64,000 bases of DNA, taken from contig NIVC01000352.1 in the NCBI GenBank assembly GCA_002269645.1, positions 124,001 through 188,000 on the forward strand, read 5' to 3'. The translations under genes were made by a program, and so were the position numbers. The notes under the pieces are model-generated. The model ran no database searches, was not told the origin of the DNA, and saw only the letters and a program-made list of their open reading frames with translations. Source of the DNA: Macrostomum lignano (taxonomy: Eukaryota). Shown piece by piece: positions 20,063-44,500 of the stretch (positions are counted from its first letter, which is position 1; every line of letters begins with the position of its first letter).

Positions 20063-21412
20063 ATGCCGTACTACAACTGGGTCTACTTTGTCCAGCTGGC
20101 AATCGTTGCTGGCGTGATGGTCATTCTGTTCCTGCTGGTTTTTTCCCACACAATGGCCATCATTTTCGCAAGATCCCACTTTTACAAGAAGGTAGCTTTC
20201 GAGCCGGCCGCTGTCGAGGCCGGCCTGCCCGGCGTGTCCATCATCAAGCCGCTGGTTGGCATAGACAAGAATGTGTACAGCAACCTGGAGACCTACTTCA
20301 GGCTGGACTATCCCCGTTACGAGCTGCTGTTCTGCCTGGAGAGCGCGGACGATGCCGTCACTATGGTGGTGGACACACTGATGCAAAAGTACCCCAAAGT
20401 AGACACCCGGGTATTTACGTCACCTGTGCGTCACAACGTCAATCCCAAGATCAACAACATGATGCAGGGCTACTCAGCAGCAAAGTACGACCTCGTGATG
20501 GTCTCAGACAGCGGCGTTAAAATGCGACCAGAGGCGCTGATGGACATGGTTTGGTGCATGTCGCAAAAGGATATCGGAATTGTCCACCAGATGCCATTCA
20601 TTGAGCAGCGACCTGGCTTTCGCAACTTGGCCCATTCCACGCATTTTGGCTGCACGCATGCCAAGTTTTACATTAGCGCCCACTGTCTGGGGATCAACTG
20701 CTGCACAGGAATGTCCTGCCTGCTGCGCAAGCCCGTCATCGACAAGAAGCCGGGCGGTCTCGCCTACTTCGGCCGCTACCTAGCCGAGGATTTCTTCGTG
20801 GCGCAGCACTTCATTGAAAACGGTTACAAGATGACGCTGTCGCACTATCCCGCGCTGCAGGACGGCAGTGGAGAAGTTAGAGGTCTGCGTAGGCGTCTGA
20901 TACGCTGGCTGCAGCTGCGCGTCGCAATGGTGCCACAGCTGGTGAGTAAATGCGGCGCTCAATGACAGCTAATAACCATCGAGTTTTAGTGTATTGGGAT
21001 TTCAAAAGTTTACGCAAGTTCCCTAATAAATACTGCTCTCCAGGTGGTACTCGAGATGCTTGCCGAGTGCCTCGTGTCCGGCGCCATGGGTGCCTGGGCG
21101 TTCGCTTTCCTGCTTCCGAGCCTGGTCAATCCAATTGTGTACTTTCTAACCCACTGCCTGATCTGGTTGCTGGCCGACTATACCCTGCTGTGCAGCTGCC
21201 TGGACCCGGCCGAGCCGCTCATGTTCAGCCGGCTGGCGTTCATGTTCACGTGGCTATTCTGGATCGGAACCCAGCCGATCACGGTGGTTCGATCGCTCTT
21301 CCACTCAGAGATTGTCTGGCGGGACAAGCGCTTCCGGCTGCAGTGGGGCGGCAACACGGTGGAGCTGCCAGGCCTGCCTGTCAACCTCAGCGCTGCCAAG
21401 CAGGCAGTTTGA
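20063..21412 (+). CDS. UGCG: Ceramide glucosyltransferase (glucosylceramide synthase, GT21). Exons 20063-20941 and 21044-21412; 415 aa
   Basis: N-terminal TM helix, GVSIIKPLVG, NPKINN, SDSG, TGMSCLLRK, LAEDFF, RxxRW (RLIRW), hydrophobic C-terminus. Phase-0 GT-AG intron 20942-21043. Confidence 0.95.
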
Positions 21413-23869
21413 CAGCGTCTGCATGCGTGCGCGGTAGATGATGATAATTACAAGCCAACCTGTCTGCTAGATGACTACGTCGCACAGCTGACGAGGTCCC
21501 AGTTTTACCCACACTTGATGAGATGCGTCCACTTAAGTAATAAATTTTATCAGCTGTGCATTTTACCCTTGTACTACGCATGTAGCTGTCTCTCTGAACC
21601 AAAAGAACAGCCCCAGCCTGTGTGTGGTTCATTTAAAAATATTGCGTATTAATTTTAGTCTGTAGAATCTTCCCTACTTAGATTTTAGGCAATGCGCGTT
21701 TCATAAGCCACATCCGAACGCTGGGTTTCAGATTTTACTGGATCTAAAACGAGAATGTTGCACAGATGCGAATTATGAAACGTGCATACCCAGTCCCGAT
21801 AAACCCGGCTTTTAACATTGATTTTTTAACTGATTTCTTCTAGACATTTTCTCAACCACCTGTCACCTGTCTGTCAGCTTTGACTGCTTTCAGCTCTGCT
21901 TCTAATGTGCCGTACCTCCTTAATAACTAATCTCCTGCCTACCTATTCAATAATGATTTGATTCATTTTGCGTGCTAAACTTCGAGTTCCCGCACCTGCT
22001 AGCTAGTACGAGTATAATATAACATTCGAAGGCGTGATTGAATATCACCAGCAATCCCTGTAGTTCCAAAAAGCTACACTGATTTTTAATAAAACCTTTC
22101 TTACTGTTTGCGAGCATGAGTCAATGCTAAGGTATAACTCGATATTTTTGTCTCTGTAATTTATTTATGTTTTGCCTGGCCAAACAAATTTTCGATTAGT
22201 ATACAAATTAAAACAAATGAAATGTCCGGGCCGTTGCTAAACCAGCAAGAGACAGAGTGATTTGCCTGAGAGCAGTTATAAGAGAGCTAATTCAAGCTTG
22301 TTGTTTGTCTCTGTTTCCAGGCAAAGCCCCGACAACGCGAACTCTTATTTAAGCTCTGACTACTCAACCAGATGGCCTAAACCGCGAGGCTACTCGTTCA
22401 ATAAACTTGTCTCGTTTTGTCCGACGTCAGACGCGTGGCTAAGATAGAAAGAGAGGCGCAAAACAATGGTGCTGCAATAGCGTAGATTACAGACGGTTGC
22501 CGAGAAAGGCATTGTGGTCTATTATACGCGTAAATTGTATCAGCTCAGTCCGTCGCCCCTATGACCCCTTGCTCACTTGAGCCACGCCCTATCTTCGTGA
22601 CGGGCGGGAGGTGGGCTGCCTGGGTCAAGCTCAATGCAGCGAATGCGGAGAAGAGAGAGAACAGAGTGAGAGCAGAGTTGAAACTGGATGAGTAGGTTGG
22701 GTAGGCAATAGCACTGCTACAGGGCATCCTGCAGGCCTATAATTTGCTGAGCACAATGCAAATGATACAGACAGAATGATGCTGTTGTCATTGGTCAATA
22801 ACGCGCCTCTTCGTCCCTCATCAGTACTCACACGGACTGCAGGCCGCGAGTGTACAGCATGAGAACAGATGGAGACTGAAGGATAGAAAACGTCTGCCGG
22901 TGAACTATGGCAACAAGGGAAAGAGGGTGAGAGAGAATTCAGCAAGCCAGCGGGCGGTAGACAATGTTATAACCTTTAAGGCAATGGAACAAAACAGCAG
23001 AACAGCAGCGAATTGAAATAATGAATTCTGAGACAACCAGCAATTTTATGTGTAATTTGTTCATTCAGGTTTCATTACAACACAAAATTAAGTGCAAATT
23101 TGCTAATATATTTTAAATTACAAAGCTGTTTGCAAAAATATGTTCTCCAGCAGGTCAATGATGGCTCATGCATCGAAGTTGTTACTGATTGTGACAGACA
23201 CCAATATCGCGTGTTCCAAACCATGGTTTTACGGCAACAATCGAAAAGTACACAAAAAGCTGTGATTGCTTTTCCTACTAGCCGTATACTTTTCCAGGTA
23301 TAGCGATATTACCATGTACCTGTCAAACACATACACTGACAACTAAAGTACATTTAAAAGTACGCTACACTCGCAAAATCGTGCAAATTTAGGAATGTTT
23401 TAGTTTCTAAAAACAAAGTTTAAATATGCCACCTGAACTCCGAATTGCAAACAAAGGAAGTGTGCAGTGCGTTGTGCATTGCTCACAAGTTTATCAAACT
23501 TGTTTCAACAGGCTGATTTTCAAGTTGGAGTTCAGATAGTCCTTGAGTGACATTGGGAATTCAATGCTGAAAACACTGAAAACTTCCCATCTCACCAAAA
23601 TCTGCACGATTCGAGAGTACAGCGTTCTTCTGCTCTAAGTTATCCATGCTCAAGCGATCACTCCTTGTAGCAGAAAAGAATATATATTTGAACCGATAAA
23701 AACTTCAGTTTACATTGGATTGTTTTTTTCAAATTGCCTAATGATAAATGACAATTTAAGCAAGCAGGAAAAAATTCATCTCATGCTAATGAATATTGGT
23801 AACATTTTTTGACCATTCGACCATCAAAGATTATCTTCGAACCCAATGCATGCGGATTTTTTTACTTTT

Positions 23870-26800
23870 GTTTCAGCCATTTCTGCCGCTGCCAGAAAAG
23901 AAGTTCATCTGAAAGAGTGAAAAAACACAATGATGGGTTCTACTATCAGTAGCATGAAGTAGAGAACAACATTTTTATATTTGCCAACGAAACTTACTAC
24001 CTGCGTATTAGCTGGAGAAGCAATAAAGTAAGCTCTGGTGAGATTCACCCAATGGAGAGTGAGACTCCTTCGATTGAGAGTGAGACTCCTTCGATTAAGA
24101 GTGAGACTCCTTCGATTGAGAGTGAGACTCCTTCGATTAAGAGTGAGACTCCTTCGATTAAGAGTGAGACTCTTTCGATGGAGAGTGAGACTCCTTCTTT
24201 TGAGAGTGAGACTCCTTCGATTAAGAGTGAGACTCCTCCGATAGAGAGTGAGACTCCTCCGATGGAGAGTGAGACTCCTCCGATGGAGAGTGAGACTCTC
24301 CTAACTAACTAACTAACGGAGAGCAAGACTCAGACTCAGAAGAGATATGATACGAGTCTTAGCCAACTGATTTCTCTGCTTCATGTTGACCGATAATGAC
24401 ATGAGGACAATCTTAAAACAGTAATAAGAGATAATAATAATACTTCAGCTATTTGCTTACCACGGTGTCGCTGAGGGCATTGAAACTGGATCGCCTTGAG
24501 GAGCCCGAGTCACCGGCAGCCCGATCCTGCAGCAGTTCAGTCATGTAGGGGTTGTTGTTGCTATTCTCAGACTTCAAGAGAACACTGCTGACTCCGCTTG
24601 AGCACAGAATCCAGTTTGCCGGACTCAATAGAAAGTTTTAGATGGACATGAATGTCATTTTACTAAGTGTAAGTCTCCAAGTGGAGCGCCTTAGTCTACA
24701 GGGGGTGGTATAGGGCATGGGGAACCCTGGTACCAAAATTTTGCCGATATGTAGTATCAATGAGGCACCATCACAAACCCAAAAAACCACAACTCCGAAA
24801 GTACTTCCCATCATAAACCCGAAATATCCCAAACCCGAAATATCCCAAACCCGAAATATCACAAACCCGAAATATCACAAACCCGAAATATCACAAACCC
24901 GAAATATCACAAACCCGAAATATCACAAACCCGAAATATCACAAACCCGAAATATCACAAACCCGAAATATCACAAACCCGAAATATCACAAACCAAAAG
25001 TATCACAAACCCGAAATATCACAAACCCGAAATATCACAAGCCAGAAGTATCACAAACCCGAAATATCCCAAACCCGAAATATCACAAACCCGAAATATC
25101 ACAAACCCGAAATATCACAAACCAAAAGTATCACAAAACCGAAATATCACAAACCCGAAATATCACAAACCCGAAATATCACAAGCCAGAAGTATCACAA
25201 ACCCGAAATATCACAAACCCGAAAAATCACACACCCGAAATATCACAAACCCGAAATATCACAAACCCGAAATATCACAAACCTGAAATATCACAAACCC
25301 AAAATATCACAAACCCGAAATATCACAAACCCGAAATATCACAAACCCGAAATATCACAAACCCAAAATATCACAAACCCGAAATATCACACACCCGAAG
25401 TATCACAAACCCGAAGTATCACAAACCCGAAATATCACACACCCGAAATATCACAAACCCGAAATATCACAAACCCGAAATATCACAAACCCGAAATATC
25501 ACAAACCCGAAATATCACAAACCAAAAATATCACAAACCCGAAATATCACAAACCCGAAATATCACAAGCCAGAAGTATCACAAACCCGAAATATCCCAA
25601 ACCCGAAATATCACAAACCCGAAATATCACAAACCCGAAATATCACAAACCAAAAGTATCACAAAACCGAAATATCACAAACCCGAAATATCACAAACCC
25701 GAAATATCACAAGCCAGAAGTATCACAAACCCGAAATATCACAAACCCGAAAAATCACACACCCGAAATATCACAAACCCGAAATATCACAAACCCGAAA
25801 TATCACAAACCTGAAATATCACAAACCCAAAATATCACAAACCCGAAATATCACAAACCCGAAATATCACAAACCCGAAATATCACAAACCCAAAATATC
25901 ACAAACCCGAAATATCACACACCCGAAGTATCACAAACCCGAAATATCACAAACCCGAAATATCACACACCCGAAATATCACAAACCCGAAATATCACAA
26001 ACCCGAAATATCACAAACCCGAAATATCACAAACCCGAAATATCACAAACCCGAAATATCACAAACCCGAAATATCACAAACCCGAAATATCACAAACCC
26101 GAAATATCACAAACCCGAAATATCACAAACCCGAAATATCACAAACCTGAAATATCCCAAACTCAAAATATCACAAACCCGAAATATCACAAACCCCAAA
26201 AGTTCTAGCAACCTCCAACGGTACTTTTTGTTTTCGGAGTTGTGATATTTCGGGTTTTTATGCCCCCCCCGTATCAATCCACATAACCTTCTAGCTTCAG
26301 AAACATTCGTGTTTTTATAAAAACCCCATCATATTAGAAACTACGCTCTCATTAGGCTTCAATGGACCGCCCATTGACCGCCCCAAGCTATTCCCGTTCC
26401 AGCGGACGCACCGGCGTGAGGTTGCACGTTGACGGTCTCCGGCTTGACAGCTTGGAGCCGGGCGGCGAGAAGAACTGATGACCTTCAGCTGTGGTGCCGC
26501 CTGCGGCAAGACTTCCGCCGCTACCGCTGCACCCGCTGCCGCCGTGAGCCCCGGCGAATGATGAAGCTACTGAGGAGCTGCCAGCTGCCGATTGCGGAGA
26601 CGTGTTGACGCTGTGCCGCCTTGGCTGCACCGCCGTCGGCAGGGAGAGCGTGAAGCTGCGGTTGGCGTCTTCCTGGAAATGTTGCCATTTTAAGATACGT
26701 TTGTAAAAAATGCTCACGTGTCTTATTGACAATACTAGTCAAAAATAACATTGAAAGAAAGTGGTGTAGGTTTAATATCCCGGGAAAAATAATACACGTA

Positions 26801-28810
26801 GATAAACGCAGTTTAAACAGTTATGTCAGGAGCAGAGCTAGTATTGAATTAACGAAATACTGATAATATGGTCCAATCTGCATGTGAACTGTGCCAGGGT
26901 GGTCCAGCGCGGCGCTCTGATGTGCCAGCGGCCCAGGCTCGATTCCAAGTTGGAATCCTGGCTTGGCTCTGCTCGTGCAATTAACGGCCTTGAGGGCCAA
27001 CCATCAAGACACAGTGAAGTGTACATGCCTAACGATAAATAAAGTTAGGACCGCTGTACACTCCTGTGTGAGTGTGTGCCTGTGCGTATGACTGCGTACG
27101 TATCCGCTCTCAGGGGAGTCGGCGGAATGGGCAGCAATGCCTCTCGCCGGTTGTGTGACAATGTCGCTTAAAGTGCGCCAAGGTGCACACAGCCCAGTAA
27201 TTGAAAATCTGGCTTTCAAGACATTTTCCAAGACAGTCAAAAAGTAAATGATGTACATGTATGTGTAGCAAATATAAAGAAGCAGCCAAATGTGTAAATT
27301 AATAAGCAGAGAAGCATCGCCTTATGGGAAGTTTAAGTCGCTTGGGATGCTTGGCTACTTGTAGAAACTCTCAGTCTGCTCATGAATGACGCGCGAGATT
27401 CTCGACTTCGCGAGTTCGGCTGCGCCAGGCAGAACGGCTTCCGGTTTAATAGTTTGGCAAGACAGAAAAACGCCTTGGCTTAGAGAAGACTGAACAGTAG
27501 AATGCACAGAGACACCGGGGAGATATTAAGCAGAGGATACTGATGGATTGAGCAGCCGACCACTTTGCCAATTGAATTTCTTCCGCTACTGAGGCGGCAG
27601 CAGCCGATCCAGGAAATTGCGACTTGGCGTGCGACACTGAGGAATCGGGCCTCATCAAATATAGCTTCATCGTCTGCTTGAGCTGGAATTGCTCCGCAAA
27701 ATGGCTGATAAATCCATAAAGCCGGTAGAGATTATTGGAAGAGCTTTTTCACGGCATAAAAATCGCAATTGCGAAATGATGAAGCACTTTGGGAGTACGG
27801 ATGCTGGTGTAACCGCCCTGTCCTTCTCAGCCCCCATCGTGAGGGAATAGGGTACATAAAACAAAATACGGCTAGATCGTGGGAAACTGATGAATGCTCA
27901 CTAGAAGATGCCTTCAGGAAAAATTCCTGGGTTGAATCTTTGCGTTTCGAGCAGCCCAGGGGCCCCTTACCTCATTGACAGATGGTGCATTTTTTCCTTT
28001 TAAACTTCAAATTGTAAGGCCACTTCAAAGAAATCATTAAAATATTGAGGTTCAAAGCCATGGGATTTTGGCAGCTAGCCGAAATGGGACGAATTTGCAA
28101 ATCCAGCAAGCAGTTCAAATATAAGATAAGGAACGCAGAGGCTACAGGGATACTCGTAGATAGTCAATGGACACAGGACAAGATAAAAGATTGCCTGACT
28201 GGTGAGACATCAGGCACAGAGCACATGAACTGGACAGACACACGACTGATACAACGTGGCTAGCAAAACATCAATTAAGCTTTTCAAAACTCAAAAAGCA
28301 AATCAAACTGTAGACAGAGAGATTTGGATAAAGGGCAGAAGGTTCAGCAGCGGCGCTCGTACACTGCTGCTGTACAAGTGACGCCTCGCAGCAGACATCG
28401 ACTCCCCGATTGGAGGATGGGGCGTCACGTCCAGACTCCGACTGCGCGGCTGATGCTGCTCAAAGTGATGCGTTATCATCAGCCTGGGCGGCTGCTGGCA
28501 GCGGTTCGGCCAGCGGTGCTGCTGCGGCTGCTGCGGCTGCTGCTGCTGTTGGTTCTGATGGTACTGGTGATGCTGGTGGAGATGTAGCAGCCTCTGTCGA
28601 CCTCTGTTATCCTCAGGGAGTAGAATCTGAGCCGCTGCCTGCTCTGCATCAGCATCAGCCGATGTAGTGACAATGATGGGCACGGAGAGGGAGTGCTGCG
28701 GCGGTTGGTGCACCCGCAGACAGTCCGGATGGGTGCCGAGCGAGCCGCTTTTAATGCGGGATGCAGCGGAGGCTGCACTGTCGCCAGCAACTGACGATGC
28801 GCTGGACTGA
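23870..28810 (-). CDS. Unidentified multi-exon gene (low-complexity, Gln/His- and RRxS-rich); exon model tentative
   Basis: Best-supported exon 26672-26412 (phase 0/0, ttccag|..ccg|gtgcgt). Exon ending at donor 24461 (SSRRSSFNALSDTV). Poly-Q segment ~28800-28365; candidate exons near 27700-27555 and 24413-24355. No domain recognised. Confidence 0.5.
24055..24300. repeat. Minisatellite, 21-bp unit (GAGAGTGAGACTCCTTCGATT)
   Basis: Tandem units. Confidence 0.95.
24700..26270 (+). mobile_element. Putative non-autonomous DNA element carrying a ~1.4-kb array of a 16-bp unit (CCCGAAATATCACAAA)
   Basis: Array at 24800-26200. Subterminal inverted segments (CACAACTCCGAAA near 24790; TTTCGGAGTTGTG near 26235). 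Related inverted copy at 45990-46330. Confidence 0.6.
26885..27145 (+). mobile_element. tRNA-derived SINE, near full-length copy
   Basis: tRNA-like head (GGTGGTCCAGCG..GGCTCGATTCC), body shared with 8790-9000, tail shared with 7140-7545, 43010-43130 and 54625-54720. Confidence 0.75.
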
Positions 28811-30903
28811 CAGTTTTTTCGGGGTTGCGATTAAATCAAAACTGAGGTTTGCGAGAGTGCTCTGGTTTCAGTTCTAGGGGATAAGGTACATTTTTGTCTG
28901 CGCGTTTCAATCTGACATTCGGAAAATCTAATTCTAAAAAAGCACAACAAAACAAAAGCCTCCACCGCTTGAACTGTACGGATGGACTAGCTAGAGTGAA
29001 TCAGCGCTCCATCTATTATGTTATTTAGTTCGATTTGCAAGTTAGGCTTCAGCAGCGTAACTTACTCGTAAGCATCAACGGAACTTAATGGGATTAGGGC
29101 TGGGAAGAGTATACCGGGTATATGAGTATGTAGGCTGATACCTAATGGAATTAGGAACGCATCGTGCATGGGCATGGCTCAGTGAGTTGACTGCAGCTCC
29201 TGTATGGATTTATGCACAGATAACAAAAAGTGCTTACTACCAATTGAAAACTATTCTACTAGTCACTAACTATAAGCTAGGGGCTTTATCTGCTGCAAAT
29301 AGGAAGATCAAAGTTTGTCGCCACTCACTGCGGTACCGCTGGCACAAAATACGTCAGTTGCCGAGCCTTTCCGAGGACTGGCGCGCAGACTGAAGGACGG
29401 ACTGCTGCCCGTTTTTCCCATCTTCACCACGGGGTCCTCGCCTGCAGGGGGAAGACGGTGTTTCACTTGAACTAAAGCTTGCCAAGATTATGCGACATCT
29501 GTAGTTTCAAAACGCATTTTACATGAAAGAAACAGGATATGTTTCATCCGGGGCGGTGACAGTGCTGGCTTGCGGGGTTAGAAAATCAATCAAGTTGGAA
29601 ACAAAACGGTGGAAAATTATTTTAAACGAATTACAGAAAGATTTTACAGAAAGTGCATCAAGGTTTAAAATTTATTGAATTTAATCGATTTATCATCACT
29701 AATAGAAGGCGTCGTCACGTGACGCAAATGGGTAACCTAAGGTTTCATCCCCGAACGAGATGTTGCTACTGAATGCGAATGAGTCACCTCCGGCGGAGTG
29801 AGGTTGGTGTCAGGTGCATTTCATTTTTTAGATCCTTTACTGAGTAAAGTCTGCAAAGCTACAATATAACTGTCAAAATACAGTATCCGGTTTAAGCAAT
29901 GGAACACTAAAAGTTCCACAATCCATAAATGGACTAAAGCTTGGTCTTAGAATTTTTATTCGTAAAGAACTTTTGTCTTTCATACCCTGAGCAGCTCTTT
30001 GCTTGCATAGCTAATTGGGTATGGGGCGGGCAACACTAGCTTTGCGGCTGTGGAGAATTCAATATCGACTTAGTAGTATAGACACGAGTGCTAAGCCATC
30101 CACTCTGCAACAGACCTTAGCCCTCTCAGCTTATTATCCTTGCCCCATCTACATCCGTTCTTCCCCCGACTGCACCTGGCTTCGGCTGAACTGCAACCAT
30201 CTGGGAACGGAAAAAATTACTGGGCAACCACATGTTACGTCTTCTGCACACCTGAGAGCAATCGGCCTGACGTTCGTGCAAGCGAAACTTGACAGTCGGA
30301 GTCGGTGCAACTAAAGGCAACAAAGGAAACGCATCAACGAGAGAACGGCTTGTTTTGTATACCTGCTATCGAGGCGATAGGTCAGAAGTTTTATCGGATT
30401 TAGAAATTCGTGAAAGAAGCATGCGGCATGTGTTGTTAGAGAGTTTTTAATCTTGTTTCACTTTTCATAGAACCACTTATGAGAGCTTATGATCTCATTT
30501 CCCAATGTGCGATGGTTCTGCAAAATTTCTCCTTAAGCTAAATGGAAGGATTAAAATAATTACGTGAAGCAGTTTGAAAGGAAGTAATGATGAAAATCTA
30601 GCTAACTACCATGGATGTATTAAGATTACTGAGGAATTAGGGAAGACTCAAAATGCTATTGCTTGAGTTGGCGGGTACCGAATCGTTATCCCATTGGCTA
30701 CGGCAGGGTGAAGAGATGCAGCCAAAACACGCAACCCGAGAATGCTCTACACAATAAAAGCCCTAGCAATATCCCCCTGACATCCCTGCTGTTAGTCCTG
30801 CTCGTGAAATTCGAACTCGAACCGGCTGGGACTCAGAACTTCGTTTCCTTTTCCATAATCACTTCGAAGCCATAAGAAATTCAGCACGACAGCTGTAGCC
30901 AGC

Positions 30904-31404
30904 ATGCGTAGGGCCGTAGCTTGCGTCGTAATATTGACCTGGATTCTATGCGAAGTCCGCTCAGCGGAGATGACGCAGAATCAGCACCTGACCGAGTCGA
31001 AAGGTGACCTGGAAAAGGCAAAACGATTCTCTTCTCCCGGGACCTACGACTGGAAGAAGAAGAGGTTCTCGTCTCCTGGAACCTATGACTGGAAGAAGAA
31101 GAGGTTCTCGTCTCCTGGAACCTATGACTGGAAGAAGAAGAGGTTCTCGTCTCCTGGAACCTATGACTGGAAGAAGAAGAGGTTCTCGTCTCCCGGGACC
31201 TATGACTGGAAGAAGAAGAGGTTCTCGTCTCCCGGGACCTATGACTGGAAGAAGAAGAGGTTCTCGTCTCTAGGAACCTATGACTGGAAGAAGAAGAGGT
31301 TCTCGTCTCCCGGGACCTACGACTGGAAGAAGAAGAGGTTCTCGTCTCCCGGGACCTATGACTGGAAAAAGAAGAGGTTCTCGTCTTCTGGAAGCCGTGG
31401 CTGA
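30904..31404 (+). CDS. Neuropeptide precursor: signal peptide, 9 x FSS(P/L)GTYDW separated by KKKR, C-terminal FSSSGSRG
   Basis: Hydrophobic N-terminus (MRRAVACVVILTWILCEVRSA), KR/KKKR convertase sites. Variation between units is mostly synonymous third-position (CCC/CCT, GGG/GGA, TAC/TAT, AAG/AAA). AATAAA at 31549-31554. Confidence 0.9.
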   Translation: MRRAVACVVILTWILCEVRSAEMTQNQHLTESKGDLEKAKRFSSPGTYDWKKKRFSSPGTYDWKKKRFSSPGTYDWKKKRFSSPGTYDWKKKRFSSPGTYDWKKKRFSSPGTYDWKKKRFSSLGTYDWKKKRFSSPGTYDWKKKRFSSPGTYDWKKKRFSSSGSRG

Positions 31405-31548: not shown

Positions 31549-31554
31549 AATAAA
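31549..31554 (+). terminator. Candidate polyadenylation signal of the neuropeptide precursor gene
   Basis: AATAAA about 145 nt after the stop codon, followed by T-rich sequence. Confidence 0.5.
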
Positions 31555-32577: not shown

Positions 32578-35500
32578 TCAAGTTTTTTTCAACACATCCC
32601 TTTCCCATCTTTCCTCATCCCAGAGACAAGCACCTGAGTCGCACAGGCGACTGGGACTCGGGTTCCCATGGCTGGGCCTTCGCATCACATTGTCCTCTGA
32701 AGTTTGCCGAGTCAGAGAGCTGCGCCTTCGCGAGTCTCGGTACCGCGATATCGCATTGGTTATATCGCCTGCCCTGCTCGCCTCCAACAGCTTGGAGATG
32801 GCCTCGATGCGCTTGCTTAGCGGAGCGGCCGACAGGTCTGCGAAAATTGGTTTGGCTCGCTTGGTTGCGAATTTTATTCGGTCTTGAACTGGCCGGACTT
32901 CTTGTGCAGGCCTTGGACGGCACATAATAGCTTGTTAGCTCTACTAAGGACTTGTCGCTTACTAAGGAAGTCATTCCAGCATGAATTTTTTCCAGCAAAG
33001 TCCTCAGACCCCTTCACTCGTCAAAGCTTTTAGTTTACTCCTTCAAATGTCAAATCTTTGTTAACAGCCACCTCACTCCCTAGCTCTCCCTAACCCCAAG
33101 CTCCCACAGCCACCTCACTCCCTAGCCCTCCCTAACCCCAAGCTCCTACAGCCACCTCACTCCCTAGCCCTCCCTAACCCCAAGCTCCTACAGCCACCTC
33201 ACTCCCTAGCCCTCCCTAACCCCAAGCTCCTACAGCCACCTCACTCCCTAGCTCTCCCTAACCCCAAGCTCCGACAACCACTCCATCTTCCCTCGCAGTC
33301 CGAGTTGTTACAAAATGTTTTCTACATCACTTGATTTCGATGATATAAAAACGCTTTCATCAATTTTACGTGATCATTCTCTTGTTTTTGCTCGGCCTTA
33401 GAACGAAATCTCAAAAGCACTCGTCGCAAAGAACTCTAGCAAAGTGTGGAACCATGCTCCACTCATCATGCCAACTAATGGCAGACAAAAAAAGCTTCTC
33501 CATTCGAAAATGATAAAACGACGGCTTTGGAAGTCATAAATCACTGGATTTTTGCAGCAAGTCTCACTGGGTCCAATTCGTCACGGCCATCTTGGATGCT
33601 TGCATGAGATCGGCTCAGCTGTCACAAGCATTTGGCTCACCTGTCAGCTAAAGCCTGCTTGGCATTGTAATTGGATAATTGGTCGGAACAAAGTGACTCC
33701 GGGAAATTTTTCAGCGCTGCTTAGCACATTGTCGGATCGGGGACAGACCGGGCTTTCGCACTTTTGATCCGGAGTGTCTGGATAAGCAAACATGCTGCAA
33801 TCAATACACTACAAATAAAATTGACTATAAATCTGGAAAGCAATCAGACTCAGGAGTGCTTATTTGCGAATTAATTATGGAATAAGTTCAACACATCGCC
33901 ATCAAGCCTATTGATCATAAAGAACTGGTTAGTTAATCATTCAATAGCCGTAGATAAGTGTTAGTCCGAACAGGCCCTAACCCTACCTGGATTGGAGTGC
34001 ACACCGGTAGCTGTCTCGTTAAGCTTCTTAATCTGCTCCTTGCGCTGCAGACCGGAGGAGCTCCGCCTGCGATGCTGAAACTTGTCGTCATCGTCTACCA
34101 TTAGCGTCAGTTCAGACTCGAAGCTCGGCTGCTGCATGGTGATGAGCGGCGGCCTGGTGTGGCTGCTGAAGAGTTTTCATTTTCGGAACTAAATTCATTT
34201 CGTGCGCTTACAACTCTACTAAGCTCTATGGTAGAAACTGAATCCAGGTAGACAACTTTCTGGACGCATTAAATCAGCCCATTCAATTGCCCACCAACGC
34301 TCCGCAAACGCCCAGAAAATGATCTGGTGCGTCACTTTCGACGTCAAGGACACCGCAGTTCGACGTCTTATCGGAAAAAAGACCAGAAGTGTTATTCGGT
34401 GCTGTGTTGATATAAAATCAGATCTAACTGAGGTTAATCTTGCGAGTCAAGGGTGTGGAAAGAGCATCAGAAATATAAGCATAGCTAGTTGCAAAGGGCT
34501 TTGAATATTGCCTCAAATTAAGGCGACCATGCAGAAGGCAAGCACACGATTCACACACACGATGCACATTGCAGGCACTCGCTCACACAGGATGCACAGA
34601 ATATGTGGCCGCATTCGGAATCGAACTCGGTGTATTTGGCTATTTAGAATGATTTTGTGATTGTAGAAAAGTACATTCATCGCGGTGCCACCCTGCTTTT
34701 TCAGCATCCTCACCCGGAGTCCTCCATCGAGTCGCTTCCGTTGACCTCCGTCAGCTTCATTTGAGCGGACCGGCCGTTCTCCAGACGCATCCACATCAAA
34801 CTGAGCGTTTCCATGACAACGCGAAAGTCCTCGCGCCTCAGATTTGGATTGACAGTGTAGGGAATGAGGTGCGGCAGCACTTTAGTGGCAATCAGGCTGA
34901 AGGTCAGGCCGAACTTCTTGTCGGAAAGCATATGCTTGTAGATGTCTGCGAATTAACGATTGCTTCTGAATTGCCCTTGACTGAGCTGAACAAGTAAAAA
35001 ATATCACATTACTCACGAATAACTGCCATATAAATGTCGGTGTCCGTAAAGTTGATTTCCAGAAGGAACGGCAAAATCTCCTCCAAAATGATCATCTTGT
35101 CCAGCCGATCAATCAACTGATCTATGCAGGCCAGCGCGTTGATTTGCATCTGAAAAATCGAGAAAACGCACTTTTATCTATTATGAGTAGGCTAACTGTA
35201 ACATGACTGTCCGAATCTTTACTCACAGGCAGCAGGCTGGAGCTGCGGCAGAAGACGGCTTTCGCCTTTGGCAGAATTAGCCGGCGCATCGTCTGCTCGT
35301 CGATGTGATCTTGCAGTACAGCGAAGGAGTTCAGAGCCGCCTCCTGCGAGACGTGCGGGATAATGGTGTAAAATCTACTCTGTAACATTCGATTGTTTAA
35401 CGCGTCACCCGTGCCTCACAAGTTCGTAAAGTTCCTATATATCTATCCAAATCTCAACCAGTCACCCAGGTTCCCACCAACGCCGAGACTTACTTGTCCG

Positions 35501-38500: not shown

Positions 38501-41500
38501 CGAGTTATACACTTTAGCCAATCAGCGACAAGGAGAGGATAAACGGGGTTAGACCCTTCAGCCAATCAGCGACGAGGAGGGTCTAAACGGGGCTTGGATC
38601 TTCAGCCAATCAGCGACGAGGAGAGGCTAAACAGGGCTTGAACCTTCAGCCAATCAGCGACGAAGCTAGACTAAAAGAGTTAGAGCCCAGTCATTTAGGT
38701 AAGAATCGATTAAGTTAAACAGGACCAATAATCTTCCGTCAAACAGCTTGCTCAAGGCAGCTGTCCTTAGCGCTTTCACTCACCTTGGAAAACAACTGCG
38801 CGGTGGGTCGGTGACGCGCCTCCCTGTCCAGCAGTTTCTCCACACTGTCGGCCAGTTCGTGGGGTAGCGCAGACAGCGCCTGGGGCAGAATTTTCGGCAG
38901 CTGCAGTGCGGCCAGTGACAGAAAGTCTGTTGAACTGCCTGCTGACACTATCTACTAGCAGTCTGCTGACACTACCTACTAGCAGCCTGCTGACACTACC
39001 TACTGGCAGCCTGCTGACACTACCTACTGGCAGCCTGCTGACACTACCTACTAGCAGCCTGCTGACACTACCTACTAGCAGCCAGCTGACACTACCTACT
39101 AGCAGCCTGCTGACACTACCTACTAGCAGCCAGCTGACACTACCTACTAGCAGCCTGCTGACACTACCTACTAGCAGCCTGCTGACACTACCTACTAGCA
39201 GCCAGCTGACACTACCTACTAGCAGCCTGCTGACACTACCTACTAGCAGCCTGCTGACACTACCTACTAGCAGCCTGCTGACACTACCTACTAGCAGCCT
39301 GCTGACACTACCTACTGGCAGCCTGCTGACACTACCTACTAGCAGCCTGTTGACACTACCTACTAGCAGCCAGCTGACACTTACCTACTGGCAGTCTGCT
39401 GACACTACCTACTGGCAGCCTGCTGACACTACCTACTAGCAGCCTGCTGACACTACCTACTAGCAGCCAGCTGACACTACCTACTAGCAGTCTGCTGACA
39501 CTACCTACTAGCAGCCTGCTGACACTACCTACTAGCAGCCTGCTGACGCTACCTACTAGCATTCTGCTGACACTACCTACTAGCAGCCTGCTGGCACTAC
39601 CTACTGGCAGTCTGCTGACACTACCTACTAGCAGCCTGCTGACACTACCTACTGGCAGCCTGCTGACACTACCTACTGGCAGCCTGCTGACACTACCTAC
39701 TAGCAGCCTGCTGACACTACCTACTGGCAGCCTGCTGACACTACCTACTAGCAGCCTGCTGACACTACCTACTAGCATTCTGCTGACACTACCTACTAGC
39801 AGCCTGCTGACACTACCTACTAGCAGCCTGCTGACACTACCTACTGGCAGCCTGCTGACACTACCTACTAGCAGCCTGCTGGCACTACCTACTGGCAGTC
39901 TGCTGGCACTACCTACTGGCAGTCTGCTGACACTATCTACTAGCAGCCTGCTGACACTACCTACTAGCAGCCAGCTGACACTACCTACTAGCAGCCTGCT
40001 GGCACTACCTACTGGCAGTCTGCTGACACTACCTACTAGCAGCCTGCTGACACTACCTACTGGCAGCCTGCTGACACTACCTACTGGCAGCCTGCTGACA
40101 CTACCTACTAGCAGCCTGCTGACACTACCTACTGGCAGCCTGCTGACACTACCTACTAGCATTCTGCTGACACTACCTACTAGCATTCTGCTGACACTAC
40201 CTACTAGCAGCCTGCTGACACTACCTACTAGCAGCCTGCTGACACTACCTACTAGCAGCCTGCTGACACTACCTACTAGCAGTCTGCTGACACTACCTAC
40301 TGGCAGCCTGCTGACACTACCTACTGGCAGCCTGCTGACACTACCTACTAGCAGCCTGCTGACACTACCTACTAGCAGCCTGCTGACACTACCTACTAGC
40401 AGCCAGCTGACACTACCTACTAGCAGCCTGCTGACACTACCTACTAGCATTCTGCTGACACTACCTACTAGCAGCCTGCTGACACTACCTACTAGCAGCC
40501 TGCTGACACTACCTACTAGCAGTCTGCTGACACTACCTACTAGCAGCCTGCTGACACTACCTACTGGCAGCCTGCTGACACTACCTACTGGCAGCCTGCT
40601 GACACTACCTACTGGCAGTCTGCTGACACTACCTAACAGCAGCCTGCTGACACTACCTACTAGCAGCCTGCTGACACTACCTACTAGCAGCCTGCTGACA
40701 CTACCTACTGGCAGCCTGCTGACACTACCTACTAGCAGCCTGCTGACACTACCTACTAGCAGCCTGCTGACACTACCTACTGGCAGCCTGCTGACACTAC
40801 CTACTGGCAGCCTGCTGACACTACCTACTAGCAGCCTGCTGACACTACCTACTGGCAGTCTGCTGACACTACCTACTGGCAGCCTGCTGACACTACCTAC
40901 TAGCAGCCTGCTGACACTACCTACTAGCAGTCTGCTGACACTACCTACTAGCAGCCTGCTGACACTACCTACTGGCAGCCTGCTGACACTACCTACTGGC
41001 AGCCTGCTGACACTACCTACTGGCAGCCTGCTGACTGTGAAGGAGTCGCCTACCTGCTAGCACTAGTACTGACACTGCTGACACTACCTACTAGCAGCCT
41101 GCTGACACTACCTACTAGCAGTCTGCTGACACTACCTACTGGCAGCCTGCTGACACTACCTACTGGCAGCCTGCTGACACTACCTACTGGCAGCCTGCTG
41201 ACACTACCTACTGGCAGCCTGCTGACACTACCTACTAGCAGCCTGCTGACTGTGAAGGAGTCGCCCGCAGAAATCGAGGATCAAAATCATAAATGGGGAT
41301 CAAGGAAAGGCAGCTGGGCTGCCAGAAAGCCCCTCCAGACATCGTCATCCTTCAATTTTCCTGCCTCCTTAAAAAAGCTCTAAAAACTGCTCCCTGATCC
41401 CCATAATCCCCATTTTTCGCCACTCGCAGGCATGTCCTTTGTTGATGTCGATAAACCCGGGCAGCTCTGTTTAATTAAAGATCCCCGACTAAGACTCCTA

Positions 41501-44500
41501 TCTATCTCCTTAGAATCGCCATATCCCCGTCCGTCGTTCTCCCTCTTTAATTTTCGAGTCCCTCATCTTTCTCGACTCTCAAGCTGCTCAGCTGGATTCC
41601 CTGCTTTCTGGGAAATACTATTAGAAGCCGATAGCTGAGAGACTGGAGGTTTAAAAAAGGCCCAGTCAGGCCTCTTTGCTCAACTGTGAGATTGGAAAAC
41701 GCAGAGATGGAGAGAACGGCGAGGACATCTGCCCTGCCCCAATGCAGCAGCGCGAGATAAGTGCTTTTAAATGCTCTGAAAGCTGCCATTTGCTAAGTGC
41801 CCGGCCCATCTCAAATAGAGGCGTACGAATTTATCAATGCATAGGAATATTAATTAATCAGGCTAATGAGATGCTGATACTAGCTGCCCAAATTGCTAAT
41901 CGATAAACACTATCCGTTAATCGATAAACACTATCAGTTAATCGATAAACACTATCCGTTAATAGATAAGCACTATCCGTTAATCGATAAATACCATCCG
42001 TTAATAGATAAACACTATCCGTTAATAGATAAACACTGTCCGTTAATCGATAAACACCATTCGCTAATCAATAAACACTATCCGTTAATAGATAAACACT
42101 GTCCGTTAATCGATAAACACTATCCGTTAATCGATAAACACTATCCGTTAATAGATAAACACTATCCGTTAATCGATAAACACCATTCGCTAATCAATAA
42201 ACACTATCCGTTAATAGATAAACACTATCCGTTAATCGATAAACACTATCCGTTAATCGATAAACACTATCCGTTAATTGATAAACACTATCCGTTAATA
42301 GATAAACACTATCCGTTAATAGATAAACACTATCCGTTAATTGATAAACACTATCCGTTAATAGATAAACACTATCCGTTAATCGATAAACACTATCCGT
42401 TAATAGATAAACACTATCCGTTAATCGATAAACACTATCCGTTAATCGATAAACACCATTCGCTAATCGATAAACTACATTTGATACTGGACAATCACCG
42501 ATCGCTACTCCGACTCCGTAAGCCCTAATCCATGCACAATAACCCGAAAATCTCAATCTGATAAACTCCAATCACCTCCGCAATCCTTCGCTGGTAATTC
42601 TGCGCATTCCGCTGCGACTCCAGCAAAGAGACGCCGGCATTGAACACGGCGTGAATGACCAGACCAAAGGAGAACATGTCACAGGCCTGAGTAGCCCTGC
42701 CGTGCAACTGCAAGTCGGGAGCCATGAAGTCTAGATCCGGCTGAGCCATCTTCGACACCTTGGCCGACCATTGGGTGTAATTGTAGGCGTCCTGGTGAGG
42801 GCGATTATGGGGAAGTTGTACTTTGTGTTTGAATTGATCACAAAAATTAAGTAGAAAATAATTTTGATAAGACTCGATCGCAATGTGCAAAGTGTCCAGC
42901 AGACTCTCCCATCCTGGTTCGATTCGATTCATTTGGGGCTTTGAAAACGAAATCTTTCCGGGGGTAATCGTGCGATGAGCCCCACCCCCCCCCCCCAAAG
43001 CACAGAGAAAGTCAGGGCCGCTGTACACCCTATGTGAGTGTCTGTGAGTGCATGCCAGAGTGCAGTATTGGCGCGCTTGCATGTGTGCTCAGGAGTCAGC
43101 GGAACGGGCAGAATTGCCGTCAGAGCTGGTTGTGGGACCGATGTTCTCCAGGGTGCCCACGGCTTTCCTGCGAATGCTGTTCTTATATCGTATTAGCCTC
43201 AGTGTAGTTGTATCCTCCACCTTCAATTCATAATCAGCCAACATGCTAACTTTCTAGGTCAATATATAAGTACGAGCCGTACCTGAGGGAGGTTTTACAA
43301 CGGACCCTTTGGGCTCATAAAACTCGATCGAGTTGTACTTATAATAGACAGAAGAATAGTGGCACGAACTCTGCAGAATCCCAAGCCCTGACTAACAGAG
43401 GCGGAGTCGCGCTTTGTGTTCGCAGTTTTTTCTACGCTATTCATTCTCGAGCACGTGGGCTCGGCCTGAAAATCCCTGCGGAAGCCGGCTTGTAACGGGC
43501 CAATTACTGGCCTTGTCGGCCTGACGAAGCCTTTCATTGCAAAAGTGCAAAGTCGCCCTGCCGGGAACCGTTTAAGCCAGCTGGAGGCTTCCGCATTCTG
43601 TGCGTGCTATGCCAGGCCTCGCGCTATGAGATGCACTTTACACTGTGCCGACGTCTGCAACCCCTGCCCTCTGTGTACTGCCGCTCGCTCTCATGTGATA
43701 GAAGACTCGGGTCTGATTCCTTAGGTTTACATATCAATAGTTCATTTTTGAGTTCGGCGATGGACTTTGAATGCGCAATTAACGTCAAGATGACGCCAAT
43801 GCCAACCATTTGAGGGACAGGAATAAAAAGTTGTGTGCACTCTGTCTTATTGCGTAAGTACGAGGTAGTTATTCTCATTCAAGACAGAATCACCCGTTCT
43901 CACGTGAGTTTCTGGAGATTTTTCCACAAAGCCGAGGCCGGAGAGTTTCCAGCAGCCGCGCTTGGTGACAATAATGGAGAAGAGGCTGAGATTGCCATGG
44001 ATCACGCGTTGGGTGAAGTGCAGGTACTTCAGTGCTTCGTTGATCTGCAAAAATCGTTTTCTGTGGCTCAAAACGCGTGTACCAGGGATCCTGACCAGAC
44101 CAATCAGACACAATGATGACGTAATAATCAGACACAATGATGACGTAATAATCAGACACAATGATGACCCAATAATCAGACACAATGATGACCCAATAAT
44201 CAGACACAATGATGACCCAATAATCAGACACAATGATGACCCAATAATCAGACACAATGATGACCCAATAATCAGACACAATGATGACCCAATAATCAGA
44301 CACAATGATGACCCAATAATCAGACACAATGATGACCCAATAATCAGACACAATGATGACCCAATAATCAGACACAATGATGACCCAATAATCAGACACA
44401 ATGATGACATAATAATTATTCACAAGGACAGCCCGATCAGACGCAATGATGACCTATCAATCAGACACAATGACAGACTGATGACGCAGGGACAGACTGA

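What the first reader, a model, noticed from the sequence alone, without database searches (positions are those of the whole stretch)
30904..31404. Neuropeptide precursor encoding a peptide I do not recognise: FSSPGTYDW x8, FSSLGTYDW, and possible FSSSGSR-amide
Seen: signal peptide, nine 13-aa units with tetrabasic KKKR linkers, and mostly synonymous differences between DNA units, unlike the non-coding minisatellites in this window. Established: basic sites are prohormone convertase substrates and a C-terminal Gly is the PAM amidation donor. The repeated peptides lack Gly, so they would be free-acid Trp-ended nonapeptides. I cannot match them to Wamide/MIP, APGWamide, AKH or pedal peptide families; novelty is inference.
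Basis: partly seen in the sequence, partly recalled or inferred. Interest (0 to 1): 0.7.

Follow-up and report, generated by a model that had tools for sequence, protein, structure and literature searches.

The report
Orphan multi-copy secreted peptide precursor, Macrostomum
This is a real, intronless flatworm (Macrostomum lignano) gene for a small secreted precursor that should be cut into nine copies of a Trp-ended nonapeptide (FSSPGTYDW); it belongs to a small uncharacterised gene family seen only in this species, and it is an ordinary kind of gene with a new peptide sequence.

Summary
ORF 30904-31404 (+) encodes 166 aa: a signal-like N-terminus, a spacer, KR, eight FSSPGTYDW units and one FSSLGTYDW unit each followed by KKKR, then FSSSGSRG-stop. 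Five of the six variable columns among the nine units are third codon positions. Other in-phase minisatellites in the window show no such bias.

The window is Macrostomum lignano. The same gene lies on GenBank contig NIVC01002988.1 with 21 units, and a transcript-derived gene model is already called there.

Three paralog types exist in M. lignano: FVQPGTYDW, FSAPGTYDW and FSAPQAFDW. They keep F1, the D-W end and the 3-4 basic linkers, while the signal and spacer diverge. All retrievable entries carry no functional annotation.

Searches of 5.8 and 1.84 billion proteins and of JGI metagenomes found no relatives outside this species. There was no Pfam match, no match in the planarian prohormone tables, and no paper containing the motif.

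Best reading: a convertase-processed multi-copy precursor of non-amidated signalling peptides. Neuronal expression is not shown; an exocrine product is the main rival. FSSSGSR-amide is chemically possible but is a degenerate tenth repeat (TGG to TGA) absent from the paralogs.

Verdict: a new peptide family of a known kind, of moderate to low interest.

The parts
30904..31404 (+). Complete intronless ORF of the precursor (166 aa plus stop)
   Evidence: The same ORF, with identical N-terminus and tail but 21 units, is at L003 20346-21314, where GenBank has a called gene.
30753..30760 (+). TATA-like AATAAAAG about 145 nt upstream of the ATG (possible core promoter; weak)
   Evidence: Read directly. 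The 300 nt upstream plus the pre-repeat ORF are 99.8% identical in L003. No functional test was made.
30904..30963 (+). Predicted signal peptide MRRAVACVVILTWILCEVRS (cleavage S20|A21)
   Evidence: basic n-region, hydrophobic core with KD 2.9, -3/-1 rule met. S20 and A21 are invariant in the alignment with the FVQPGTYDW paralog. This is a heuristic; SignalP was not available.
30964..31020 (+). Acidic spacer propeptide AEMTQNQHLTESKGDLEKA
   Evidence: pI 4.8. It is poorly conserved among paralogs: 16 of the first 41 residues are invariant.
31021..31026 (+). First dibasic cleavage site, KR
   Evidence: K40 and R41 are invariant in all family members.
31027..31377 (+). Nine 39-bp units, each a nonapeptide plus KKKR (8 x FSSPGTYDW; unit 7, 31261-31299, is FSSLGTYDW)
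31378..31404 (+). Degenerate tenth unit FSSSGSRG plus stop (the Trp codon TGG is TGA here)
   Evidence: It is identical in L003 and has no counterpart in the paralog tails.
31549..31554 (+). AATAAA polyadenylation-signal consensus, 145 nt after the stop
   Evidence: Read directly. Inference only.

Best explanation
The gene encodes a secretory multi-copy propeptide of Macrostomum lignano.

Proposed mechanism:
1. The signal peptide is removed, at S20|A21, on entry to the ER.
2. In the regulated secretory pathway, subtilisin/kexin-type prohormone convertases cut after the KR at residues 40-41 and after each KKKR.
3. A carboxypeptidase E/D-type enzyme trims the basic residues.
4. This releases eight FSSPGTYDW and one FSSLGTYDW, as free-acid nonapeptides with net charge about -1 and [M+H]+ of 1059.44 and 1075.47.
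5. By-products are an acidic spacer peptide and a C-terminal remnant, FSSSGSRG, which may become FSSSGSR-amide.

The peptides most likely act as extracellular signals (neuropeptide or peptide hormone) on an unidentified receptor.

Shown here: the ORF and its anatomy, selection on the peptide, the gene family, and the existence of a GenBank gene model at the locus. That the locus is transcribed is inferred from how those models were built (PMC5730564).

Inferred: signal-peptide cleavage, convertase and carboxypeptidase processing, the signalling role and the cell type.
For: Anatomy: a signal-like N-terminus and nine near-identical peptides, each bracketed by di- or tetrabasic sites, in a 166-aa protein.

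Selection acts on the peptide rather than on the DNA repeat:
- Within arrays, variable columns fall at third codon positions: 5 of 6 in the window, 6 of 8 in the 21-unit copy L003, and 6 of 8 in paralog L002, where the other two are K/R swaps in the linker.
- Every peptide-changing variant in the window and L003 is at peptide position 4 (P/L/S). One further replacement in L003 turns a linker into KKKS.
- Comparing the consensus units of the window and paralog L001, the ten codons for F1, P4-W9 and the K-K-R linker carry 6 synonymous nucleotide differences, including Arg AGG versus CGC, and no replacement. Codons 2 and 3 are fully replaced, and one Lys codon is gained or lost in frame (39-bp versus 36-bp unit).
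- Only 16 of the 41 residues of signal peptide, spacer and first KR are invariant.

Family: four paralog types in M. lignano (FSSPGTYDW, FVQPGTYDW, FSAPGTYDW, FSAPQAFDW) all keep F1, D8, W9 and 3-4 basic residues. The window locus and the FVQPGTYDW locus lie in paralogous collinear blocks next to GT21 glucosyltransferase paralogs that are 64-70% identical at the protein level. The duplication is therefore old, and both copies were kept.

Transcription: GenBank M. lignano gene models derive from RNA-seq and transcriptome assemblies (PMC5730564), and a model exists at this locus and at the paralogs.

Machinery and precedent:
- M. lignano has a PC2 homologue expressed in the nervous system (PMC4490696).
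- In Collins et al. 2010, planarian peptidomics reports non-amidated peptides, bolded in Table S5 (for example spp-6 IPGIGFNRNFAIY). Their ppp-1 is a multi-copy, non-amidated precursor with KR/KKR/KRR linkers (PMC2953531).
- Clade-restricted multi-copy peptides, including non-amidated ones, are common in neuropeptidome surveys (PMC6188537).
Against: There is no evidence on cell type, no peptide detection and no receptor.

No relative was found outside M. lignano, so cross-species conservation could not be tested. All comparative evidence comes from paralogs in one genome.

The signal peptide was judged by a heuristic only.

Copy number differs, 9 versus 21, between two 98%-identical copies. 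That is compatible with a neuropeptide gene, but it is equally typical of exocrine repeat peptides, and the shorter array could be an assembly collapse.

The two main flatworm neuropeptide catalogues (McVeigh 2009, Koziol 2016) could not be read, so an earlier naming of this family cannot be excluded.
Confidence: 0.6

Rival explanations
1. Same processing chemistry but an exocrine product. The peptides would be made in gland cells (prostate or seminal fluid, pharyngeal, rhabdite or mucus glands) and released outside the body. They would act as a pheromone, a mating allohormone, or a defensive or deterrent peptide rather than as a neuro/endocrine signal.
For: High and variable copy number (9 versus 21 units) and several paralogs producing near-identical peptides would suit bulk secretion. 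The family is restricted to one lineage. The search also picked up an unrelated protein with the same repeat-plus-dibasic logic (P0046; GSGTQDW-KR repeats). From my own knowledge, yeast alpha-factor and honeybee apidaecin precursors are built the same way.
Against: The three paralog IDs (Mlig017890, Mlig001773, Mlig030851) are absent from the compiled table of in-situ-validated reproduction-related M. lignano transcripts in Brand et al. 2020, supplementary file 16. This is a weak negative, because the window gene's own ID is unknown. The peptide core is strongly conserved between old paralogs (consensus units), which is unlike the rapid evolution reported for reproduction-related genes in this genus (title and abstract of PMC7336406). 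The anionic 9-mer (net charge -1.2) does not look like an antimicrobial peptide.
Confidence: 0.22
2. The protein is secreted intact and is not cleaved. It would be a small, very basic, aromatic-rich repeat protein, for example a component of adhesive, mucus or eggshell material that works through Lys/Arg-aromatic interactions.
For: The uncleaved mature protein would have pI 10.3 and about +28 charge, with W, Y and F in every 13 residues. From my own knowledge, small basic aromatic-rich proteins occur in bioadhesives.
Against: The linkers are conserved as canonical convertase sites ending in K/R-R (KR, KKR, RKR, KKKR), while their length varies between 3 and 4 residues. A KR also precedes the first unit, immediately after a non-repetitive spacer. 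Selection falls on a discrete 9-mer. At 166 aa the protein is very small compared with known flatworm adhesive proteins (my own knowledge).
Confidence: 0.08
3. It is not a functional gene: a 39-bp minisatellite that happens to be open in one frame behind an ATG.
For: The window is full of minisatellites (59 TRF rows). A 178-aa ORF also spans the array on the opposite strand. Copy number is unstable.
Against: Variation is biased to third codon positions, unlike ten control arrays. Old paralogs keep the frame, the peptide and the basic sites with different codons and unit length. The N-terminus is signal-like in all paralogs. Transcript-derived gene models exist.
Confidence: 0.03

Closest known systems
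Uncharacterised M. lignano paralogs: BOX15_Mlig017890g1/g3 and Mlig030851g1 (FVQPGTYDW), BOX15_Mlig001773g8 / PAA48327.1 (FSAPGTYDW), UniRef A0A1I8HD77 (FSAPQAFDW)
   Same: Same architecture: signal peptide, short spacer, KR, then tandem F-x-x-x-x-x-[YF]-D-W nonapeptides separated by 3-4 basic residues. The genomic ORFs are intronless. The Mlig017890 locus is collinear with the window.
   Different: Peptide positions 2-6 differ. The units are 36 bp rather than 39 bp. The tails are NEE or KSME rather than FSSSGSRG. The signal and spacer have diverged. None has a described function.
Planarian pedal-peptide-like prohormone Smed-ppp-1 (Collins et al. 2010, PMC2953531)
   Same: A flatworm multi-copy precursor of non-amidated peptides of about 12 residues, separated by KR, KKR or KRR. 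It should work the same way: convertase cleavage plus carboxypeptidase trimming, with no amidation.
   Different: The peptide motif (x-Y-D-P-I-G-G-G-L-L) is unrelated. No sequence similarity was detected by HMMER.
Wamide / MIP family, for example planarian Smed-npp-5 SAWRDMPWamide (PMC2953531)
   Same: A multi-copy precursor whose peptides end in Trp.
   Different: Wamides have Gly after the Trp (the amidation donor) and usually a second, internal Trp. Here W is followed directly by KKKR and there is no internal Trp.
AKH / RPCH peptides (for example the Drosophila AKH core F-S-P-D-W; recalled from memory)
   Same: A superficial F-S...D-W resemblance.
   Different: AKH precursors carry one peptide directly after the signal peptide, starting with Gln (pyroGlu) and ending W-G-K/R-R (amidated). 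Here there are nine copies after a spacer, with no Gln and no Gly.
Clade-restricted non-amidated multi-copy peptides of acoelomorphs (LWDY and AWDF peptides; Thiel et al. 2018, PMC6188537)
   Same: Lineage-specific, non-amidated multi-copy peptides containing a Trp-Asp/aromatic motif. They show that such orphan families are common.
   Different: The motif order differs (W-D-aromatic versus aromatic-D-W), the phylum differs, and there is no evidence of homology.

Membership tests
Classical multi-copy prohormone / neuropeptide precursor (a functional class, not a homology family) | N-terminal signal peptide | tested here: met
   Heuristic only: basic n-region, 11-residue hydrophobic core with KD 2.9, -3/-1 rule at VRS|A. 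The same holds in two paralogs.
Classical multi-copy prohormone / neuropeptide precursor (a functional class, not a homology family) | Several copies of a conserved short peptide, each flanked by di- or polybasic convertase sites, in a small protein | tested here: met
   KR plus 9 x (9-mer + KKKR) in 166 aa. The sites and the peptide core are conserved in paralogs.
Classical multi-copy prohormone / neuropeptide precursor (a functional class, not a homology family) | Expression in neurons or endocrine cells, and detection of the mature peptide | not testable with these tools
   Only indirect evidence is available: transcript-derived GenBank gene models exist at the locus and at the paralogs. 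No localisation or peptidomic data were found.
Wamide / MIP / allatostatin-B | C-terminal Trp followed by a Gly amidation donor (W-G-basic) | tested here: not met
   In all nine units W is followed directly by KKKR. The same is true of all paralogs.
AKH / RPCH / GnRH-type | A single peptide copy immediately after the signal peptide, N-terminal Gln (pyroGlu), and a C-terminal Gly plus dibasic site | tested here: not met
   There are nine copies after a 19-aa spacer. The peptides start with Phe and have no Gly donor.
APGWamide | Repeated A-P-G-W-G plus a basic site | tested here: not met
   No APGW is present, and no Gly follows the Trp.
Pedal peptide / orcokinin | Non-amidated multi-copy peptides with the conserved [FY]-D-x-I-G...L/F core | tested here: not met
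   The multi-copy, non-amidated format is shared, but the core motif is absent (compare Smed-ppp-1). No HMMER similarity was found.
Any Pfam-A family | Score at or above the gathering threshold | tested here: not met
   Only three sub-threshold chance matches of 17.7-21.9 bits, against cut-offs of 27-43.
Previously named flatworm npp/spp families (McVeigh 2009; Collins 2010; Koziol 2016) | Peptide motif listed in those catalogues | tested here: inconclusive
   The Collins 2010 tables contain no YDW, GTY, DWKK, DWKR, DWRR or DWRK. The McVeigh 2009 and Koziol 2016 papers are not held. Full-text searches for FSSPGTYDW and GTYDW returned no paper.

The most novel reading that the evidence does not exclude
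The F-x-x-x-x-x-[YF]-D-W free-acid nonapeptides could be a Macrostomum-lineage invention used as an externally released signal. That would mean a pheromone or mating allohormone in a model species for sexual conflict. Its dose would be tuned by rapid repeat-number change (9 versus 21 units between near-identical copies) and by paralog multiplication, and it would act on a partner's receptor rather than within the animal's own nervous system.
Probability: 0.1. Interest if true: 0.6.

Novelty: new member of a known kind. Interest (0 to 1): 0.35.

Why it matters
If the peptides are real signals, they add an orphan, non-amidated, Trp-terminated peptide family to the flatworm repertoire. That would mean at least four paralogous genes in M. 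lignano.

M. lignano has RNAi, in situ hybridisation and transgenesis, so function and receptor could be tested directly. Non-amidated peptides are systematically missed by amide-directed antibodies and motif searches, so the family also shows what such screens overlook.

Lineage-restricted multi-copy peptides are found routinely in neuropeptidome surveys (PMC6188537). A specialist would find this useful rather than surprising.

A practical by-product concerns annotation. The GenBank gene models of all three loci examined delete whole repeat units as false introns, so the deposited proteins understate the copy number.

Tried and rejected
1. Another Macrostomum species. I first read the window as coming from a different species, because the first hit locus (L001) was only 70-80% identical in exons. 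I rejected this once the GT21 neighbour proved 99% identical to M. lignano Mlig021767g2 and contig NIVC01002988.1 matched at 98-99.8%. L001 and L002 are therefore paralogs, not orthologs, and I have no cross-species evidence.

2. Relatives elsewhere. I ran an exhaustive HMMER search of 1.84 billion representatives, word-seeded searches of 5.8 billion proteins with the single sequence and with a five-sequence profile, and a JGI metagenome scan. Only M. lignano proteins are true hits. The other 100 or so HMMER hits are unrelated tandem-repeat proteins (inspected).

3. The 231-aa GenBank product at the window's own locus. I tried to recover it by enumerating all in-frame 273-nt deletions. None of the five candidates is in the collection, so its accession remains unknown.

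4. Expression data. The paralog IDs do not occur in the supplements of Grudniewska 2018 or Brand 2020. No Macrostomum peptidomics or neuropeptide catalogue is in the library.

5. GT21 linkage. I asked whether GT21-precursor linkage holds at a third GT21 paralog (L007). No family member lies within 10 kb downstream.

6. Neighbouring ORFs. Pfam searches of ORFs near the gene (26391-26732, 28306-28713, 32581-32925, 34713-35388) found nothing.

7. Tyr sulfation. I considered sulfation at Y-D. It is not conserved, because one paralog has Phe at that position, so I do not propose it.

Full report
OBSERVATION

The feature is exactly as described. ORF 30904-31404 on the + strand encodes 166 aa:

MRRAVACVVILTWILCEVRS / AEMTQNQHLTESKGDLEKA / KR / nine 13-aa units / FSSSGSRG-stop.

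The nine units are exact 39-bp repeats at 31027-31377 (TRF period 39, 9.2 copies, no indels). Eight encode FSSPGTYDW-KKKR and unit 7 encodes FSSLGTYDW-KKKR.

Among the nine units only six columns vary, and five of them are third codon positions. The single amino-acid change is Pro to Leu in unit 7.

An open frame through a 39-bp repeat proves nothing by itself. A 178-aa ORF also spans the array on the minus strand, with shorter ones in another plus-strand frame. I therefore ran the same phase test on ten other minisatellites of the window whose period is a multiple of three. None shows a phase bias.

The N-terminus passes a simple signal-peptide test: an MRR n-region, an 11-residue hydrophobic core with mean Kyte-Doolittle 2.9, and V-R-S|A obeying the -3/-1 rule. 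The ATG has A at -3. A TATA-like AATAAAAG lies at 30753-30760, and an AATAAA lies at 31549-31554, 145 nt after the stop (read). Those last three are consensus matches only.

SOURCE ORGANISM, AND A CORRECTION MADE DURING THE WORK

The only database hit of the precursor was a Macrostomum lignano hypothetical protein, BOX15_Mlig017890g3. Its locus, L001, is collinear with the window. A GT21 glycosyltransferase lies upstream, several small conserved blocks lie between, and another conserved block lies downstream. Identity, however, is only 70-80% at the nucleotide level, so I first took the window for another Macrostomum species.

That was wrong. The window's GT21 ORF (20063-20962) is 99% identical to M. 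lignano BOX15_Mlig021767g2. Its GenBank contig, NIVC01002988.1 (L003), matches window 26947-31393 at 98.1%. The 423 nt that run into the first repeat match at 99.8%.

The window is therefore M. lignano: an allele, a recent duplicate, or another line or assembly. L001 is a paralogous block within the same genome, where the GT21 paralogs are 64-70% identical at the protein level.

THE SAME GENE IN GENBANK

L003 20346-21314 is an uninterrupted ORF with the identical signal, spacer and FSSSGSRG tail, but with 21 units:
- 15 FSSPGTYDW
- 3 FSSSGTYDW
- 2 FSSLGTYDW
- one linker mutated to KKKS
- a 7-unit higher-order periodicity

Six of its eight variable columns are third positions. Every peptide-changing variant is at peptide position 4.

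A gene with a 231-aa product is called at exactly those coordinates. That is 91 aa, or seven units, shorter than the ORF, so the model contains a false intron.

The GenBank annotation of this assembly was derived from RNA-seq and transcriptome assemblies, with expression thresholds (PMC5730564). A model at this locus is therefore indirect evidence of transcription. I could not recover the accession of the 231-aa product.

THE FAMILY

Four paralog types exist in M. lignano:

| Type | Peptide | Source | Detail |
|---|---|---|---|
| A | FSSPGTYDW | window and L003 | 9 and 21 units |
| B | FAQAGTYDW once, then FVQPGTYDW seven times | Mlig017890g1/g3, Mlig030851g1 | KKR linkers, tail NEE; genomic ORF L001 10001-10423 |
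| C | FSAPGTYDW eight times | Mlig001773g8 | KKR/RKR linkers, tail KSME; L002 10001-10402 |
| D | FSAPQAFDW / FSAPHAFDW | UniRef A0A1I8HD77 | fragment |

The invariant features are F1, D8, W9, an aromatic residue at position 7, and 3-4 basic residues after the Trp.

Comparing the consensus units of A and B:
- The ten codons for F, P, G, T, Y, D, W, K, K and R carry six synonymous nucleotide differences, including Arg AGG versus CGC, and no replacement.
- Codons 2 and 3 are completely replaced.
- One Lys codon has been gained or lost in frame.
- Only 16 of the first 41 residues (signal, spacer and first KR) are invariant.

This is the signature of selection on a discrete processed peptide and its cleavage sites, not on a DNA repeat or on a folded protein.

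DISTRIBUTION

No relative was found outside M. lignano. The searches were:
- a word-seeded search of 5.8 billion proteins with the single sequence;
- the same with a five-sequence profile;
- an exhaustive HMMER search of 1.84 billion cluster representatives (the remaining hits are unrelated tandem-repeat proteins, inspected);
- a pattern scan of JGI metagenome contigs.

Transcripts of a related species are present in the collection: its GT21 is 86% identical, from Logan runs SRR28338163-5. No precursor from that species was found. Short repeat-rich transcripts assemble poorly, so this is weak negative evidence.

MECHANISM

The best-supported reading is a classical multi-copy propeptide:
1. Signal-peptide removal.
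2. Convertase cleavage after KR and after each KKKR.
3. Carboxypeptidase trimming.
4. Release of eight FSSPGTYDW and one FSSLGTYDW as free acids. No Gly is present, so there is no amidation. Net charge is about -1, and [M+H]+ is 1059.44 and 1075.47.

Supporting context:
- M. lignano has a PC2 homologue expressed in the nervous system, and its knock-down is lethal to hatchlings (PMC4490696).
- In Collins et al. 2010, planarian peptidomics reports non-amidated peptides, bolded in Table S5. Their Smed-ppp-1 is a multi-copy, non-amidated precursor with KR/KKR/KRR linkers (PMC2953531).

The processing steps and the signalling role are inferred, not shown.

The C-terminal FSSSGSRG could be amidated to FSSSGSR-NH2. 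It is plainly a decayed tenth repeat: TCT for CCT, AGC for ACC, CGT for TAT, GGC for GAC, and TGA for TGG. The paralogs have unrelated tails. I regard it as a by-product.

RIVALS

| Rival | Main points | Confidence |
|---|---|---|
| Exocrine peptide (pheromone, seminal allohormone or deterrent) made by the same chemistry | Favoured by high and unstable copy number and by lineage restriction. Weakly disfavoured because the paralog IDs are absent from the compiled table of in-situ-validated reproductive transcripts, and because old paralogs conserve the peptide strongly. | 0.22 |
| Uncleaved, very basic aromatic repeat protein (pI 10.3, about +28) | Disfavoured by canonical K/R-R sites of variable length, and by the KR that precedes the first unit. 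| 0.08 |
| Non-coding minisatellite with a chance ORF | Effectively excluded by the codon-phase bias, the paralogs and the transcript-derived models. | 0.03 |

COMPARISON WITH KNOWN FAMILIES

- Pfam: no match above threshold.
- Wamide/MIP: excluded, because these need W-Gly. Planarian npp-5, SAWRDMPW-amide, shows the contrast.
- AKH-type: excluded, because it needs a single copy after the signal peptide, pyroGlu and a Gly donor.
- APGWamide: excluded, because the motif is absent.
- Pedal peptide/orcokinin: the format is shared but the core motif is absent.
- Collins et al. 2010 planarian prohormone tables: no YDW, GTY, DWKK, DWKR, DWRR or DWRK.
- Full-text searches for FSSPGTYDW, GTYDW and Mlig017890: no paper.
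- McVeigh 2009 and Koziol 2016: could not be read, so an earlier naming cannot be fully excluded.

Functionally, the closest analogue is any non-amidated multi-copy flatworm prohormone such as Smed-ppp-1. By homology, the closest relatives are the uncharacterised M. lignano paralogs.

VERDICT

The prohormone architecture and the lack of a family match hold. A neuronal role is unproven. The gene is already deposited without functional annotation. FSSSGSR-amide is unsupported.
- This is a new peptide family within a well-known kind of gene.
- Lineage-restricted multi-copy peptides are common finds (PMC6188537), so interest is moderate to low at 0.35. The family is readily testable in a tractable model animal.

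Noticed in passing
window 60093-60493 (-): An isolated fragment of eukaryotic 18S rRNA (Rfam RF01960, model positions 53-429 of 1831, 190 bits) sits between minisatellites and an EML gene. It is probably a dead rDNA fragment.
   Followed up: no
whole window, e.g. 38937-41250, 56155-58784, 24810-26200: Minisatellite density is extreme: 59 TRF rows. Arrays include 24 bp x 96, 57 bp x 46 (with a 229-bp higher-order period) and 16 bp x 87. This agrees with the 15% simple/tandem repeat content reported for M. lignano (PMC5730564).
   Followed up: partly
L001 10001-10423; L002 10001-10402; L003 20346-21314: The GenBank gene models of all three family loci remove whole repeat units as false introns: 92 versus 140 aa, 85 versus 133 aa, and 231 versus 322 aa. 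The deposited proteins therefore understate the peptide copy number. Mlig030851g1 (P0107) also contains frameshift-like junk (EALCPTGTYDW).
   Followed up: yes
window 20063-21438 (+): A GT21 ceramide glucosyltransferase gene, 99% identical to BOX15_Mlig021767g2. M. lignano has at least three GT21 paralogs, at 64% identity to this ORF. Two of them have a peptide-precursor paralog 8-10 kb downstream, which indicates an old block duplication.
   Followed up: partly
window 24452-24526, 26606-26676, 29336-29446: Short blocks are conserved at 75-87% between the window and the paralogous loci (L001, and for the first two also L002), despite otherwise unalignable intergenic DNA. They could be exons of an unannotated gene or regulatory elements. 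There was no Rfam or tRNA hit.
   Followed up: partly
window 33984-35346 (exon-like ORFs on the - strand, 34710-35388): This region is conserved with L001 14400-16289, where no gene is called. The translated pieces have no Pfam hit. It may belong to a multi-exon minus-strand gene that also includes the weak kinase-like ORF at 42525-43079.
   Followed up: partly
window 3971-4498 (+); 62382-62978 and 63329-63991 (-): A G-protein alpha-subunit exon (Pfam G-alpha, E 2e-24) and an EML-type beta-propeller exon (E 1e-40) with an adjacent ORF carrying only a weak HELP-motif match (E 0.005). These are ordinary neighbouring animal genes.
   Followed up: no
window ~17842-17847 versus L003 2713-7860: About 5 kb present in the GenBank DV1 contig is absent from the window. 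It is probably a transposable-element insertion or deletion polymorphism between the two copies.
   Followed up: no
P0005 (UniRef A0A1I8HD77): The FSAPQAFDW paralog fragment is named 'Coat protein' in UniRef. Nothing in its sequence supports the name, so it looks like a spurious automatic label.
   Followed up: no
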